DNA of 64,000 nt from Paramoeba atlantica (lineage: Eukaryota; Protista; Discosea): positions 434,001 to 498,000 of the forward strand of contig CDRNVI010000016.1 of assembly GCA_977017575.1 (NCBI GenBank), written 5' to 3'. Below are positions 9,116 to 22,386 of the stretch, piece after piece (the first letter of the stretch is position 1; the number at the start of each line of letters is the position of its first letter). A program made the position numbers and the translations under genes. The notes under the pieces are model-generated. The model had not been told where the DNA came from. It saw only the letters and a program-made list of their open reading frames with translations, and ran no database searches.

Positions 9116-9898
9116 ATGGATTCGACTTATGATTTTCTTCTGCCAGCGGACCCCGACGCCCCTGAAGTGCCATGGGCGTGGTCAGAATGGACTACATGCC
9201 GTGCGAATCTATACTCTACGCAAGTTGAGCGTCAGCTCGAGGGTATAGAAATGGTTACCCGTTGGGAGCTACGAGCAGGCGACGCCACTCGCCTGATTGA
9301 TCTTACCGCAGCGTTAGTTCGCGTTGGAGTGTTGCATGAGGAATTAGCGGAGTCTCTTCGAATGCGCGTAAAGTACAAAGATTCCTCGGTTCCAGATTCG
9401 CTTTCTCATGTTATTTGCGATGCACGAGGTCACGTCCATGTGCTCTGTTTGGCCTACTCAATGGCATTGGTTCGTCTCGTAAATGCAATAACGGATCATT
9501 TTCCTGTAACGCTGAACAAGGAGGGACGTAGTAGTGTGCGACAAAGGGCGCAAGCGCGTGGGTTGCCACCGGAGCTAGTTACTCTTCGTCACTGTGCGAC
9601 ACATACCGAACTACCAGCTCTCCAAGAACTATTGTGCTGCAAAAAGGTAGCAATGGATTATTTGTGGAAGATATATTGGAAGCCGCAATATGATTTGCTA
9701 CAAAAAGCCCGCAGGAAATATGAGTCTAGCAAAAGTTCGAAAAAGCGAAATTCGCAAAAGGACGCAAAGGAATATACTGGCGATGAAGATAAAAGTGGAC
9801 TGACGCACAGCAACGCGACAAAAGATCGGGAAAAAACTGTAAGCAGGGGAAGAGAAGAGGAGTGCAGTGATCCGCCTTCCCCTCCTGATTTTGAATAA
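9116..9898 (+). CDS. LAS1: Las1 HEPN endoribonuclease (ITS2 pre-rRNA cleavage)
   Basis: VPWAWSEW, LAYSMALVRLVNAITD, GLPPELVTLRHCATHTELP (HEPN RH..TH motif), DYLWKIYW. Confidence 0.9.
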   Translation: MDSTYDFLLPADPDAPEVPWAWSEWTTCRANLYSTQVERQLEGIEMVTRWELRAGDATRLIDLTAALVRVGVLHEELAESLRMRVKYKDSSVPDSLSHVICDARGHVHVLCLAYSMALVRLVNAITDHFPVTLNKEGRSSVRQRAQARGLPPELVTLRHCATHTELPALQELLCCKKVAMDYLWKIYWKPQYDLLQKARRKYESSKSSKKRNSQKDAKEYTGDEDKSGLTHSNATKDREKTVSRGREEECSDPPSPPDFE

Positions 9899-13715: not shown

Positions 13716-14285
13716 ATGCTTTTCCCTACTACTGTGCTTCAGCGGAAAGCCATTGTCCGTAGCAAGACGCGACTCAATGGGGCACCGGGTCCTCTTCGCA
13801 TAAAGTTATTTTCCGATCGTCGGGTACCAGCGGTGCAACGTTTTTCTGACATTATTGTGGCAAGGCGACATACGCCATACAATCCTGGTCGACGTGTCAT
13901 TCACTACATGGGAAAACATGTTCCTCATCCTCAAAAATCTCTTTGGTCTCCTGATAGTCCGATTCCACAGGATCGTCATTTATTTAAAATGACAACTTTG
14001 GACATTGATGCCTTCAAGTATTACTATGGCGTAGCACGAGCTGATCTAGATCCCAAGGTTTGGGAGATTTTATCTCATGCTGGTCTGTTACCTCCCCCAT
14101 ATGAAAAGATTAATTACATGCTTCCTATGCCCATTTTTGATAAATCATCACTGTATCGCTACTATTTAAGAAAAAGACCCAGCGTAGAAGAGCTTGAGAG
14201 GCGAGACTATTTGGATTATAGCAACGGAATGGTTCGAACACCAGAGGAGCGAGCTGCTCGAATGCCGCAGGAGCCTTGGCTATAA
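13716..14285 (+). CDS. Mitochondrial ribosomal protein bS16m (kinetoplastid-type, extended)
   Basis: LRIKL...FSDIIVARRH...GRRVIHYMGKHVP and LDIDAFKYYYGVARADLDPKVWEILSHAGLL align by eye with S16 IRL...Y.IVva..r..dG..iE.lG.Y.P and ld.e...yW...GA.....V..Ll..aGl. Confidence 0.65.
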   Translation: MLFPTTVLQRKAIVRSKTRLNGAPGPLRIKLFSDRRVPAVQRFSDIIVARRHTPYNPGRRVIHYMGKHVPHPQKSLWSPDSPIPQDRHLFKMTTLDIDAFKYYYGVARADLDPKVWEILSHAGLLPPPYEKINYMLPMPIFDKSSLYRYYLRKRPSVEELERRDYLDYSNGMVRTPEERAARMPQEPWL

Positions 14286-14630: not shown

Positions 14631-15752
14631 ATGCATAGCACGAAAAAACGAAGTAGTGCAAAGAAAGATACAAATGAGTCCTCGAAATTAGCGAAAAAAG
14701 TTCGTGGCAAGGGCATCAAAGGCTCCGTAACGCAGAAAGTTGTTACGGACGAAGCCACCCAGGTGAACCCACTTTGTGTCGGATGCGAAGCCGTAATAGG
14801 AGAGTCAGTGTCGTGTCGTTGTACATGTTGCGAACAGGTTTTTCATAGAGAGTGTGTTCTCTATTTGGGAAACAACAGGATGAAACCACGGATTCGAATA
14901 AAATGTCCTTATTGTCTTTTTCAAGAACGAGTCATTAGCAACCATGATTTGGATTCAACACTCTTGGGAGAAGCTAAAACATTCAACAAACAGGGGTATG
15001 TCGTTCCTACTTGCTTGGGCTTCTTATCCAGAGAGGCGAAGGATTTACAAGTTCTCATTATGAACGAGTTTGATCGTCTCTCTGAGGCATTTGCCTACCA
15101 AACTCGAGTACTTGATCCAACCGAAGGATTTTCGAACTTTAGGCAAAGGGGCTCGGGGCGCTTTGAGATTATTCCGCATTGGCTTCAGAATTATGTTGAT
15201 GAAAAACTTTCGCCACTTCCGTGGCTACCGCTTGTAAGAGCTATATTAGGTCCCGATTTCGTGTCACATGGGATGGGTGTTTTTATCAGTATGCCCGGTG
15301 CAGAAGCACAAAAGTATCACACGGACGGACCTTGCTTGGACTACACGCGGGATCTACCGTGCCATGCACTGAACGTGTTCGTAGCTTTGGACGACGTAGG
15401 CCCGAAAAACGGTACTGAAATTATTCCAGAATCTCACCGAAAGTATATGACGGAAAGCAGTGATCGACCTCTTTTTTCTAAGAAGCCTTTGAAAAAAAAG
15501 AAATCGTCTTCGACCCCAATACAGAATAGGGAAACCTTTCCTAGGAGACCAACTAAAGATTCAGTGGTACCTGTCGTCACCAGTGGTGACATTTACCTGT
15601 TTGATTATCGAGTGCGACATCGCGGAGTCAGAAATGCGACAGGAATGTCACGACCATGTGTGTATTTCACGTACACCGTGCCTTGGTATCACGACGTATA
15701 TAACTTTAGCAAGAGGAGGTACAGAAGTGCTTTAATTCCAGTAGCGGAATAG
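14631..15752 (+). CDS. PHD finger fused to a PhyH-family 2OG/Fe(II) dioxygenase
   Basis: C4HC3: CVGC...CTCC-EQVF-H-RE-C...CPYC. Dioxygenase: FNKQGYVV, PGAEAQKYHTDG (HxD), ALNVFVALDDV..KNGTEIIPESHR, GDIYLFDYRVRHRGVRN...RPCVYFTY. Confidence 0.85.
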   Translation: MHSTKKRSSAKKDTNESSKLAKKVRGKGIKGSVTQKVVTDEATQVNPLCVGCEAVIGESVSCRCTCCEQVFHRECVLYLGNNRMKPRIRIKCPYCLFQERVISNHDLDSTLLGEAKTFNKQGYVVPTCLGFLSREAKDLQVLIMNEFDRLSEAFAYQTRVLDPTEGFSNFRQRGSGRFEIIPHWLQNYVDEKLSPLPWLPLVRAILGPDFVSHGMGVFISMPGAEAQKYHTDGPCLDYTRDLPCHALNVFVALDDVGPKNGTEIIPESHRKYMTESSDRPLFSKKPLKKKKSSSTPIQNRETFPRRPTKDSVVPVVTSGDIYLFDYRVRHRGVRNATGMSRPCVYFTYTVPWYHDVYNFSKRRYRSALIPVAE

Positions 15753-16284
15753 CAATCGTTCAACTTGTATAAAATAGATCCTTATACAGTCTTCATGAAA
15801 CATGCCTGTGACTTACTGCTCGAATGTGTTTATGATCGTTCGCCTAACGGGGTTTGATCGGTTTTAGGGGTTGCATTGGGTTTGATTTTATGAATAAATT
15901 CATAAACTAAAGTTGCGTACCTTCCTACCAAATTTTTAAACTGAATCAGATGTACAGTTCGCCGAGTATAGAAAGATACGTACGGCATGATATTTTTGGT
16001 TGTGTTCTAAATTGAACTTTGAAGTGGTTAAAAGTAAGAGTACAAGTGATGGGTATATTCTTTAAATGACATAGTGTTAGTACTTCCATTCTATTTGATA
16101 TTTGCATTTGATTTTGGTGATGTGATTTTTGGTCTACGAAGCCAATTTTCATACCAATTTATTTCACGGAAATATCTGACGTACAGAACTGAAACACCTG
16201 GTGTACTGTCATGCTCTGTAAATTTGAAGCGGTTGCATTAATTTCCAATTGTCTAGTATCACTTTCCTATAGTCTACCTGTATC

Positions 16285-21678: not shown

Positions 21679-22386
21679 ATGAATACCCCTCAACCTGGAA
21701 TAAAGTCCGAGGGCGTTCACGTGCTGATGTCGCGCAAGGACGCCACCACCCCCTGGGGTCTTACCCTCTTCGAGGACTCCTGGACGGTCAACGCCATGCG
21801 GCCAGCGGGCATCGCCGAGCGCAGCGGCCTGCGGGAGGGGGACCAAATCCTGCAGGTCAACGGCATCTCCGTGTACTCCCCGGTCGCGCGCAGCATTATG
21901 GGTGCGCAGGCTGTGGTGCACCTGGACGTACAACGACCGGTCGTCACCCAGAGTGCGGTCGCACAACGCGAAGCCCCGAGTGCGGGGGACCGGGAAAAGG
22001 AGAAAGCAGAGACGTGTCGGGGGGAAGGTGAAACCCACGCGAGCAAGCTACCCCCCGCCGGGGTCATGGTTCGCGAGCGTCAGCTTTTTGAGGAGAAGAT
22101 TCTAGCGGAACGTACCGGGATATTGCGTGAGGAGATGGGGCGGAGAGGCAAAATTAACCACGAGTTTGCTGTGTGTCCTGAAGTGCACCATGAGATTCTT
22201 CTCCATAGAGCAAGGAAACAGCATGAGCATTGCAAGGCACGAGAACTACAACAACAAGAGTGTGAACGCGAGAAGATGCGAAAAATTGTGCGTATTGCAT
22301 TTGGTTCACTATCTCCTTATCCAACGTTTGCCCATTTTCTTGCCCAACAGAAATGTCCTGGTGTAGCTGGAACGTCAACCAAATAA
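21679..22386 (+). CDS. PDZ-domain protein with a C-terminal charged/coiled region
   Basis: RKDATTPWGLTL...VNAMRPAGIAERSGLREGDQILQVNGISV is a canonical PDZ. Confidence 0.8.
   Translation: MNTPQPGIKSEGVHVLMSRKDATTPWGLTLFEDSWTVNAMRPAGIAERSGLREGDQILQVNGISVYSPVARSIMGAQAVVHLDVQRPVVTQSAVAQREAPSAGDREKEKAETCRGEGETHASKLPPAGVMVRERQLFEEKILAERTGILREEMGRRGKINHEFAVCPEVHHEILLHRARKQHEHCKARELQQQECEREKMRKIVRIAFGSLSPYPTFAHFLAQQKCPGVAGTSTK

What the first reader, a model, noticed from the sequence alone, without database searches (positions are those of the whole stretch)
14631..15752. PHD finger fused to a PhyH-type dioxygenase: candidate non-JmjC, non-TET chromatin oxygenase
Seen: Lys-rich NLS-like N-terminus, a complete C4HC3 PHD finger, then a PhyH-fold enzyme with the HxD...H iron triad and the distal Arg intact, plus a KKPLKKKK insert. 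Established: PHD fingers read histone H3 tails; known chromatin 2OG oxygenases are JmjC, AlkB or TET/JBP, whereas PhyH enzymes act mainly on small metabolites. Kinetoplastids have divergent histone tails and oxidative base J chemistry. Inference: a reader-coupled hydroxylase or demethylase of a type I do not recognise as characterised.
Basis: partly seen in the sequence, partly recalled or inferred. Interest (0 to 1): 0.72.

Follow-up and report, generated by a model that had tools for sequence, protein, structure and literature searches.

The report
PHD-like finger fused to PhyH oxygenase
This kinetoplastid gene joins a histone-reader-type zinc finger to an intact iron/2-oxoglutarate oxygenase of a family otherwise known for small-molecule chemistry; the fusion is conserved in trypanosomes and Leishmania and its trypanosome copy is enriched in nuclei, so it is a credible but untested candidate for a new kind of chromatin-modifying enzyme.

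Summary
Window 14631-15752 (+) is a 373-aa ORF with a Lys-rich disordered N-terminus, a C4HC3 finger (residues 49-95), a significant PhyH domain (Pfam E 1.5e-12) with the H230-x-D232...H330 triad and R341, and a Lys-rich disordered insert.

The window's finger is below Pfam's PHD cut-off. A profile of the kinetoplastid fingers nevertheless hits PHD fingers first in the PDB and matches bona fide PHD fingers of related PhyH proteins (hhalign 95%).

The gene is not unique to this genome:
- The finger-PhyH architecture, with all eight zinc ligands and the catalytic residues invariant, occurs in Trypanosoma, Leishmania, Leptomonas and Papus.
- The T. brucei orthologue is inferred to be Tb927.3.3440, annotated only as 'PhyH, putative'. 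It meets the nuclear-enrichment criteria of a published nuclear proteome and is absent from a systematic chromatin-factor survey.
- Relatives in other protists carry PHD, Chromo, MBT, MBD or HMG domains.
- The closest solved enzyme is KanJ, an oxidative deaminase.

Verdict: the candidate chromatin oxygenase reading is strengthened by domain association and nuclear enrichment. Substrate and histone binding are untested. I rate it a new variant of a known kind, interest about 0.6.

The parts
14631..15752 (+). Complete ORF, 373 aa plus stop: finger-PhyH oxygenase gene
   Evidence: ORF list. First ATG after an in-frame stop. A 99% identical protein P0001 lies on an ENA contig with the same neighbours. 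Covered by a contig of run X2, which also holds a spliced-leader-tagged contig and so contains mRNA.
14631..14750 (+). Lys/Arg-rich disordered N-terminal extension (residues 1-40), with NLS-like K[KR]x[KR] at residue 22
   Evidence: 12 K/R in 40 residues. pLDDT 36-40. Similar basic extensions occur in Papus P0003 and in P0151, whereas trypanosomatids carry a basic C-terminal tail instead.
14775..14915 (+). C4HC3 zinc finger, divergent PHD type (C49, C52, C64, C67, H72, C75, C92, C95)
   Evidence: All 8 ligands are invariant in 20 kinetoplastid orthologues. The profile hits PHD fingers first in the PDB: ALFIN-LIKE 3 at 5.7e-5, then SHPRH, DPF3, KDM5B, Pygo, MLL, BPTF. hhalign gives 95%, E 3.5e-8, against Pfam-passing PHD fingers of related PhyH proteins. 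Modelled with pLDDT 77-92 as a two-strand sheet plus helices.
14949..15737 (+). PhyH-fold (KanJ-like) Fe(II)/2-oxoglutarate oxygenase domain, residues 107-369
   Evidence: Pfam PF05721 E 1.5e-12. Foldseek puts KanJ first at E 1.4e-12. VIA gives Z 19.3 to KanJ over residues 106-372. The orthologue profile against the PDB gives KanJ at E 5e-18, with the next hit at 3e-7.
15318..15326 (+). H230-T-D232, the proximal His and Asp of the iron triad
   Evidence: Invariant in 90 relatives. Aligned to the KanJ HxD.
15618..15620 (+). H330, distal iron-binding His (DYRxxHRG motif)
   Evidence: Invariant in 90 relatives.
15651..15653 (+). R341, predicted 2-oxoglutarate C5-carboxylate-binding Arg, 11 residues after H330
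   Evidence: Invariant in 90 relatives. The spacing matches the PhyH family (my own knowledge of human PHYH H264/R275).
15456..15560 (+). Lys-rich disordered insert (residues 276-310) containing KKPLKKKK (15480-15503)
   Evidence: 11 K/R in 35 residues. pLDDT about 50. Absent from trypanosomatid orthologues; unrelated inserts sit at the same loop in P0004 and P0062.
15753..15840 (+). Probable 3' UTR: the X2 RNA-run contig ends at 15840, 88 nt after the stop
   Evidence: Contig record 2 of X2 covers the stretch up to 15840. X2 has nothing over 15841-16255. Its next contig starts at 16256 behind a spliced-leader tail.

Best explanation
The gene encodes a catalytically competent Fe(II)/2-oxoglutarate oxygenase of the KanJ-like branch of the PhyH family. 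It is imported into the nucleus through Lys-rich NLS-like segments. A divergent PHD-type zinc finger, placed directly N-terminal to the catalytic domain, targets it to chromatin or another nuclear protein partner.

Shown: the domain architecture, intact metal and co-substrate residues, conservation across Kinetoplastea, PHD homology of the finger, nuclear enrichment of the inferred T. brucei orthologue, and repeated fusion of this PhyH subfamily to chromatin-reader and DNA-binding domains in other protists.

Inferred: the finger docks on a histone tail or a similar Lys-rich segment, and the enzyme oxidises a C-H bond next to a nitrogen in a side chain. That could be hydroxylation of (methyl)lysine, N-demethylation through a hydroxymethyl intermediate, or KanJ-like oxidative deamination. 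This is the same reader-plus-eraser logic as PHD-JmjC demethylases, built on a different catalytic scaffold.
For: - PhyH domain above the Pfam cut-off, with H230/D232/H330/R341 invariant in 90 relatives.
- KanJ is by far the closest solved enzyme: profile E 5e-18 against 3e-7 for the next; Foldseek E 1.4e-12; VIA Z 19.3. KanJ carries out C2' oxidative deamination of an amine-bearing carbon (PMC13707489).
- Finger ligands are invariant in 20 orthologues. The finger profile hits PHD fingers first in the PDB and aligns to Pfam-passing PHD fingers of sister proteins at 95%.
- Of 21 finger-bearing representatives, 12 match Pfam PHD at E<=0.01, and 8 of 10 scanned singly pass its curated cut-off, including a double PHD and a PHD plus HMG box. 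Further relatives carry Chromo (2), MBT (2), MBD (1) and HMG.
- Named bearers of PHD-PhyH are Thecamonas trahens and Telonema subtile.
- Tb927.3.3440 is one of only two T. brucei PhyH proteins (PMC5855954). It was detected with 11 peptides, nuclear enrichment score 1.446, p 0.036, and so meets the authors' nuclear criteria of NES >= 0.7 and p <= 0.05 (PMC5519215 S1 Table).
- No PTS1 or PTS2 in any orthologue. K[KR]x[KR] motifs sit at the N-terminus here and at the C-terminus in 11 of 12 trypanosomatid orthologues.
- The gene is covered by a contig of a run that contains spliced-leader-tagged mRNA. Between strains the coding region differs at 0.5% of sites against 1.7-2.8% in the flanking intergenic DNA.
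Against: - No biochemical or binding data exist for any member that I could find.
- The window's finger is sub-threshold for every Pfam zinc-finger model. It lacks the Trp before ligand 7, and the WxH aromatic is present only in the Leishmania/Leptomonas copies. Methyl-lysine or H3 reading therefore cannot be assumed.
- All characterised close structural relatives act on small molecules.
- Some relatives are fused or adjacent to GNAT acetyltransferases or methyltransferases, and some may be bacterial. That fits small-molecule chemistry equally well.
- Several invariant arginines (R173, R177, R327) could point to an acidic or phosphate-bearing substrate rather than a basic histone tail.
- Nuclear enrichment is moderate, comes from one fractionation study of the T. 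brucei orthologue, and the orthologue assignment is inferred.
- Tb927.3.3440 was not found in the stored (possibly truncated) TrypTag supplements.
Confidence: 0.5

Rival explanations
1. Nucleic-acid oxygenase. The enzyme is brought to chromatin by the finger but oxidises a DNA or RNA base or sugar rather than a protein side chain, as a PhyH-fold counterpart to JBP/TET or AlkB.
For: Relatives are fused to DNA-binding HMG boxes and to a methyl-CpG-binding domain. Invariant arginines R173, R177 and R327 lie near the core motifs. Kinetoplastids already use 2OG oxygenases on DNA (base J; my own knowledge). An unchecked scan note (s1-381833) suggests 5mC in this genome.
Against: There is no similarity to TET/JBP or AlkB. 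Methyl-lysine-type readers (PHD, Chromo, MBT) outnumber DNA binders among the fusions. To my knowledge no PhyH-family enzyme is known to act on nucleic acids.
Confidence: 0.15
2. Small-molecule enzyme with an accessory finger. The PhyH domain hydroxylates or deaminates a metabolite (amino acid, polyamine, amino sugar or lipid), and the finger serves only for folding, oligomerisation or regulation. Under this reading the nuclear enrichment would be incidental.
For: Every solved close relative is a small-molecule tailoring enzyme: KanJ, DhiD, FtmOx1, AndA, EctD, leucine hydroxylase. A relative has a GNAT neighbour and another is a GNAT fusion. Tb927.3.3440 appears among the genes of a Leishmania lateral-gene-transfer study (PMC4711719), which hints at a bacterial metabolic origin.
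Against: The finger has been conserved with eight invariant ligands since the kinetoplastid ancestor. The subfamily has been fused repeatedly to five kinds of chromatin or DNA modules in distant eukaryotes. NLS-like motifs are kept although their position moved. The T. brucei orthologue is enriched in nuclei. There are no peroxisomal signals.
Confidence: 0.22
3. RING-type E3 ligase finger. The Cys-rich module recruits an E2, and the protein couples ubiquitylation to oxygenase activity.
For: Weak single-sequence hits to the Arkadia RING (E 0.022) and to zf-RING_2 (E 0.018).
Against: The ligand order is C4HC3, not C3HC4 or C3H2C3. The residue aligned to the RING fourth ligand is Gln69. The C4-x4-H spacing does not fit the RING-CH form (x7; my own knowledge). 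With the orthologue profile, the nine best PDB hits (E < 1e-3) are all PHD fingers, and Arkadia drops to E 0.012 with no significant stretch.
Confidence: 0.03
4. Catalytically dead scaffold, like the other T. brucei PhyH-domain protein MRB7260.
For: There is a precedent in the same organisms: MRB7260 lacks most iron and 2OG-binding residues and works as an RNA-editing complex subunit (PMC5855954).
Against: Here the full HxD...H triad, the 2OG Arg and about ten further core residues are invariant across 90 relatives.
Confidence: 0.03

Closest known systems
KanJ, kanamycin B dioxygenase (Streptomyces kanamyceticus; PDB 6s0r, 7cl2)
   Same: It is the closest solved relative by sequence profile (E 5e-18) and among the top by fold (Foldseek E 1.4e-12, VIA Z 19.3). 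It shares the Q-x2-H-x-D-x-P, NG-TE-x-PGSH, D-x-R-x2-HRG-x2-N and RP motifs. It is an Fe(II)/2OG enzyme that oxidises a carbon bearing an amine.
   Different: KanJ is a stand-alone bacterial antibiotic-tailoring enzyme with no zinc finger or NLS. Identity is only about 21%. KanJ's substrate-contact residues were not compared here.
PHD-JmjC histone demethylases (PHF8/KDM7B, PHF2, KDM5 family)
   Same: They share the modular logic of a PHD finger placed beside an Fe(II)/2OG oxygenase domain. The PHD fingers of PHF8, PHF2 and KDM5B appear among the profile hits of the finger.
   Different: The catalytic domain here is PhyH, not JmjC. The finger lacks the aromatic-cage signature. No demethylase activity has been shown.
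Human PHYH and PHYHD1 (phytanoyl-CoA 2-hydroxylase family founders)
   Same: Same Pfam family PF05721, with the same triad and His-to-Arg spacing (my own knowledge).
   Different: PHYH is peroxisomal (PTS2) and acts on an acyl-CoA. This protein has no PTS1 or PTS2, and PHYH does not appear among its significant PDB sequence hits.
JBP1/JBP2, kinetoplastid thymidine hydroxylases of base J synthesis
   Same: They are nuclear 2OG oxygenases of the same organisms acting on chromatin, joined to a targeting module (my own knowledge).
   Different: They belong to the TET/JBP family, not PhyH, and no sequence or fold match was seen.
T. brucei MRB7260 (RESC subunit with a degenerate PhyH domain)
   Same: It is the only other PhyH-domain protein in T. 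brucei (PMC5855954).
   Different: It is mitochondrial, lacks the catalytic residues and has no finger.

Membership tests
PhyH family (Pfam PF05721) of Fe(II)/2OG oxygenases | Sequence match above the curated Pfam cut-off | tested here: met
   48.7 bits against a cut-off of 22, E 1.5e-12, residues 144-343.
PhyH family (Pfam PF05721) of Fe(II)/2OG oxygenases | HxD...H iron triad and a 2OG-binding Arg about 11 residues after the distal His | tested here: met
   H230, D232, H330 and R341 are present and invariant in 90 relatives.
PhyH family (Pfam PF05721) of Fe(II)/2OG oxygenases | Double-stranded beta-helix fold superposable on solved PhyH-family enzymes | tested here: met
The second model has pLDDT 81.8 and pTM 0.80.
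PhyH family (Pfam PF05721) of Fe(II)/2OG oxygenases | 2OG-dependent oxygenase activity | not testable with these tools
   Needs a recombinant enzyme assay.
PHD finger (Pfam PF00628) | C4HC3 ligand order with C-x2-C-x(8-21)-C-x(2-4)-C-x(4-5)-H-x2-C-x(12-46)-C-x2-C spacing | tested here: met
   Spacing x2, x11, x2, x4, x2, x16, x2. The ligands are invariant in orthologues.
PHD finger (Pfam PF00628) | Sequence match above the curated Pfam cut-off | tested here: not met
   The window protein gives no PF00628 hit. Its best hits are zf-HC5HC2H_2 at 16.3-16.6 bits (cut-off 27) and PHD_NSD at 14.9 bits (cut-off 23.9).
PHD finger (Pfam PF00628) | Profile-level homology to established PHD fingers | tested here: met
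   The orthologue profile against the PDB gives nine hits at E < 1e-3, all PHD fingers. hhalign gives 95%, E 3.5e-8, against Pfam-passing PHD fingers of related PhyH proteins, with all 8 ligands aligned.
PHD finger (Pfam PF00628) | Conserved aromatic residue (usually Trp) two residues before the 7th ligand, or an aromatic cage for methyl-lysine | tested here: not met
   Ile90 occupies that position, and trypanosomatid copies have Ser/Thr/Asn and similar residues. The W of the WxH motif occurs only in Leishmania/Leptomonas copies.
PHD finger (Pfam PF00628) | Binding of histone H3 tail or other chromatin ligand | not testable with these tools
   Needs peptide arrays, ITC or NMR.
RING finger (C3HC4 / C3H2C3 / RING-CH) | His as the 4th ligand (or, in RING-CH, Cys-x7-His spacing) | tested here: not met
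   The 4th ligand is Cys67, the residue aligned to the Arkadia 4th ligand is Gln69, and the C4-to-H5 spacing is 4.
JmjC, TET/JBP and AlkB chromatin or nucleic-acid oxygenases | Sequence or fold match to those families | tested here: not met
   None appears among the Pfam hits at E <= 10, the PDB sequence hits or the top 50 fold matches.

The most novel reading that the evidence does not exclude
The KanJ-like PhyH subfamily is a third, independently recruited class of reader-coupled chromatin oxygenases, beside JmjC and TET/JBP/AlkB. It would be spread over several eukaryotic supergroups (Kinetoplastea, apusomonads, Telonemia, marine plankton). It would oxidise histone lysine or methyl-lysine side chains by demethylation, hydroxylation or oxidative deamination, under the guidance of PHD, Chromo or MBT modules. 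Under this reading Tb927.3.3440 would be an overlooked histone-modification eraser in trypanosomes.
Probability: 0.3. Interest if true: 0.85.

Novelty: new variant of a known kind. Interest (0 to 1): 0.6.

Why it matters
Known enzymes that oxidatively erase or edit chromatin marks belong to the JmjC, TET/JBP and AlkB families. Here an intact oxygenase from a different branch, PhyH (KanJ-like), is joined to histone-reader or DNA-binding modules in distant protists, and its trypanosome copy is enriched in nuclei. That suggests an unexplored type of chromatin chemistry.

Kinetoplastids control polycistronic transcription largely through chromatin, and their histone tails are divergent. The T. brucei, T. 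cruzi and Leishmania orthologues are genetically tractable. The protein was also absent from a systematic survey of 65 T. brucei chromatin factors. The hypothesis can therefore be tested directly with existing tagging, knockout and histone mass-spectrometry pipelines.

If the substrate turns out to be a metabolite, the result would still correct database names. Several orthologues are mislabelled 'ADP-ribosylation factor-like protein 3A'.

Tried and rejected
- RING and C1 readings of the finger were rejected on ligand order and spacing and on profile hits.
- A peroxisomal PhyH role was rejected: no orthologue has PTS1 or PTS2.
- A pseudoenzyme was rejected: the catalytic residues are invariant.
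- The word-index protein search found only 2 hits for the window protein and would have suggested an orphan. The exhaustive HMMER search showed 1550 relatives.
- Literature searches for PHD+PhyH, PhyH+chromatin and phytanoyl+PHD+chromo found no description of this architecture.
- Iyer et al. 2010 (PMC2938197) mentions PhyH only in bacterial secondary-metabolite contexts.
- Two Aravind-group reviews could not be checked and may already list the architecture. The 2008 parasitic-protist chromatin survey is not held under its PubMed id. No PMC id was available for the 2011 chromatin methylation review.
- Tb927.3.3440 was not found in the Staneva et al. text or supplements, nor in the stored TrypTag supplements, which may be truncated.
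- NCBIfam gave nothing. The ESM Atlas gave only generic PhyH clusters.
- The primary KanJ structure paper is not held, so KanJ substrate-contact residues were not compared.
- The finger could not be searched structurally on its own, because both structure-prediction jobs went to the full-length protein and model coordinates are not exposed to scripts.
- Gene neighbours are uninformative, as expected in a polycistronic unit: Las1-like, a PDZ protein, RNR large subunit and ORFs with no Pfam match.
Full report
**1. Observation**

The window holds a 373-aa ORF at 14631-15752 (+), exactly as reported. Its ATG is the first after an in-frame stop two codons upstream.
- Residues 1-40 carry 12 Lys/Arg and are modelled as disordered.
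- Residues 49-95 form C-x2-C-x11-C-x2-C-x4-H-x2-C-x16-C-x2-C, a C4HC3 pattern.
- Pfam finds PhyH (PF05721) at 48.7 bits against a cut-off of 22, E 1.5e-12.
- The triad H230-x-D232...H330 and R341, eleven residues after the distal His, are present.
- KKPLKKKK sits at residues 284-291, in a low-confidence loop (276-310) that trypanosomatid orthologues lack.

On its own the finger reaches only sub-threshold scores for PHD-like, RING and C1 models.

**2. Organism, expression and constraint**

All large ORFs nearby are on one strand.

Public run X2 holds a contig that begins at window 16256, behind 24 unmatched letters ending ...CAGTTTCTGTACCTTGTT. This is a kinetoplastid-type spliced-leader tail, 29 nt upstream of the ribonucleotide reductase (RNR) ATG. 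X2 therefore contains trans-spliced mRNA.
- Another X2 contig covers the gene and stops at 15840, 88 nt after the stop codon.
- X2 has nothing over the intergenic stretch 15841-16255.
- That contig also spans the upstream ORF, so it does not define the gene's own 5' end.

Two further runs carry a variant with 30 differences in 2301 nt. Six fall in the 1122-nt coding region (0.5%). The two flanking intergenic stretches differ at 1.7% and 2.8%. This fits purifying selection, although 5 of the 6 coding changes are non-synonymous, at non-conserved positions.

The neighbouring RNR large subunit is closest, among named organisms, to Perkinsela (73%). In the PhyH tree the window protein is sister to Papus ankaliazontas. 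The genome therefore probably lies near Prokinetoplastina. In a second unnamed ENA genome the orthologue P0151 also sits immediately upstream of RNR.

**3. A conserved family, not an orphan**

The word-index search found only the 99% identical ENA copy and one metagenomic relative. The exhaustive HMMER search found 1550 relatives at E <= 1e-3 and 468 at E <= 1e-10.

Orthologues with the same finger-PhyH layout exist in T. theileri, T. melophagium, T. cruzi, T. rangeli, T. equiperdum, T. congolense, T. vivax, Leishmania spp., Leptomonas spp. and Papus. In a 20-sequence alignment all eight zinc ligands and the catalytic residues are invariant, while the fingers are only 19-36% identical to the window's.

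Database names are 'phytanoyl-CoA dioxygenase (PhyH), putative', 'hypothetical protein' or, wrongly, 'ADP-ribosylation factor-like protein 3A'.

McAdams et al. state that T. brucei has two PhyH-domain proteins, MRB7260 and Tb927.3.3440 (PMC5855954). MRB7260 is a degenerate RNA-editing subunit, and the T. congolense orthologue lies on chromosome 3. I therefore infer that Tb927.3.3440 is the T. brucei orthologue.

**4. What the finger is**

A profile of the 19 kinetoplastid fingers searched against PDB sequences gives nine hits below E 1e-3, all PHD fingers: ALFIN-LIKE 3 and 1, SHPRH, an Arabidopsis PHD protein, DPF3 and DPF2. These are followed by KDM5B, ZMYND11, Pygopus, MLL, BPTF, PHF8, PHF2 and TAF3. 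The Arkadia RING falls to E 0.012 with no significant stretch.

Profile-profile comparison with nine PHD fingers taken from related PhyH proteins, eight of them above Pfam's PHD cut-off, gives 95% probability and E 3.5e-8, with all eight ligands in register.

The second AlphaFold model (90-sequence alignment, pLDDT 81.8, pTM 0.80, five concordant models) builds the finger at pLDDT 77-92. It has a two-stranded sheet around ligands 3-5 and helices after H72/C75 and C92/C95, which is compatible with a PHD cross-brace. I could not inspect the coordinates or search the finger alone.

The finger is atypical. It has no Trp two residues before ligand 7. The Trp of the common W-x-H motif occurs only in the Leishmania/Leptomonas copies. 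It is thus a divergent PHD-type finger whose ligand cannot be read from sequence.

**5. What the catalytic domain is**

Foldseek and VIA-align place residues 106-372 on PhyH-family enzymes: KanJ at E 1.4e-12 and Z 19.3, then AndA, DhiD, AsqJ, PrhA, FtmOx1 and SnoN. By sequence profile KanJ stands far above the rest, at E 5e-18 against 3e-7 for the next hit. It shares the extended motifs around the triad.

KanJ oxidatively deaminates the C2' amine of kanamycin B (PMC13707489). Nothing resembles JmjC, TET/JBP or AlkB.

Across 90 relatives R173, R177, H230, D232, N248, F250, G261, T262, D325, R327, H330, N335, R341 and N358 are invariant. The enzyme is therefore very probably active.

**6. Evidence for a nuclear or chromatin role**

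(a) Domain association. I scanned about 150 representatives of the subfamily.
- 21 carry a C4HC3 motif upstream of PhyH.
- 12 of those 21 match Pfam PHD at E <= 0.01.
- 8 of 10 scanned singly pass the curated cut-off, one with two PHDs and one with an HMG box.
- Other relatives carry Chromo (2), MBT (2), MBD (1), HMG and one more PHD.
- Named examples are Thecamonas trahens XP_013754847 (UniProt: 'Zinc finger PHD-type domain-containing protein') and Telonema subtile. One PHD-PhyH cluster has 190 members, including a Tara Oceans marine sequence.
- On a quick ML tree the kinetoplastid proteins fall in a supported clade (SH-aLRT 98) with a few other finger-bearing and fingerless proteins. Fingers are scattered through the other clades. 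The association is recurrent or ancient; the tree cannot tell which.

(b) Localisation. In the T. brucei nuclear proteome (Goos et al. 2017, S1 Table) Tb927.3.3440 was detected with 11 peptides, a nuclear enrichment score of 1.446 and p 0.036. The authors' criteria for a nuclear protein were NES >= 0.7 and p <= 0.05.

(c) Targeting motifs. No orthologue has PTS1 or PTS2. K[KR]x[KR] cores occur at residues 22 and 288 here and near the C-terminus in 11 of 12 trypanosomatid orthologues, three of them as KRxR, the motif Goos et al. found enriched in nuclear proteins.

**7. Mechanism proposed**

Most likely (about 0.5) this is a nuclear, finger-targeted, active 2OG oxygenase acting on a chromatin-associated macromolecule. 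The specific version with a histone (methyl)lysine substrate I put at about 0.3. It rests on analogy with PHD/Chromo/MBT-JmjC enzymes and on KanJ's amine-adjacent C-H oxidation.

Rivals:
- A metabolite enzyme with an accessory finger (0.22). It is supported by the small-molecule substrates of all solved relatives and by GNAT or methyltransferase neighbours and fusions.
- A nucleic-acid oxygenase (0.15). It is supported by the HMG and MBD fusions and the invariant arginines.
- A RING E3 finger (0.03).
- A dead scaffold (0.03).

**8. Novelty**

I found no paper describing a PHD-PhyH architecture or any study of Tb927.3.3440 beyond a mention and a gene list. It is absent from the 65-factor T. brucei chromatin survey and its supplements. 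Two Aravind-group reviews that might list the architecture could not be read.

The family and its domains are already present in public databases, so the gene itself is not new. What is new is three things: recognising a conserved divergent PHD finger in the kinetoplastid proteins, the KanJ-like affinity, and the convergence of the chromatin-domain fusions with nuclear enrichment. I class this as a new variant of a known kind (a reader-coupled 2OG oxygenase on a different scaffold), interest about 0.6.

Noticed in passing
window 16232-16284: A contig of run X2 starts at 16256 behind 24 unmatched letters ending ...CAGTTTCTGTACCTTGTT. This marks a spliced-leader acceptor 29 nt upstream of the RNR large-subunit ATG (16285) and gives the 3' end of this organism's spliced leader.
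   Followed up: partly
window 13716-14285: The 189-aa ORF just upstream has no Pfam match. It is called as a gene on the ENA contig and is co-assembled with the finger-PhyH gene in one X2 contig.
   Followed up: no
P0009, P0159, P0160, P0163-P0165 (Trypanosoma orthologues): Several orthologues are named 'ADP-ribosylation factor-like protein 3A' in NCBI/UniProt although they are finger-PhyH proteins. This is probably a name carried over from the adjacent ARL3A gene (adjacency from my own memory). Likewise, the two Perkinsela RNR large subunits are labelled 'origin recognition complex subunit 1 / cell division cycle 6'.
   Followed up: no
window 15292: The window has T (Met221) where all three runs that cover the site and the ENA protein P0001 have C (Thr221). 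This is a polymorphism or an assembly difference at a non-conserved residue.
   Followed up: no
L003 6001-9710 (ENA ERZ25071330 contig, 1.42 Mb): A second unnamed kinetoplastid-like genome with very short intergenic spacers keeps the same gene order, finger-PhyH then RNR large subunit.
   Followed up: partly
L002 431-2469; P0189: A fingerless relative (P0002) lies downstream of a GNAT acetyltransferase gene on a metagenome contig, and P0189 is a GNAT-PhyH fusion. An ESM Atlas cluster from Chlorophyta joins PhyH to Methyltransf_16, which I recall as a protein-lysine methyltransferase family.
   Followed up: no
A2 alignment (59 long relatives, 500-1150 aa): A large clade of long proteins shares a conserved N-terminal region with no Pfam match, about 500 residues upstream of the PhyH domain. 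Its taxa were not identified.
   Followed up: no
window 9116-9898 and 21679-22386: A Las1-like protein (E 1.5e-28) and a PDZ-domain protein lie in the same polycistronic unit.
   Followed up: no
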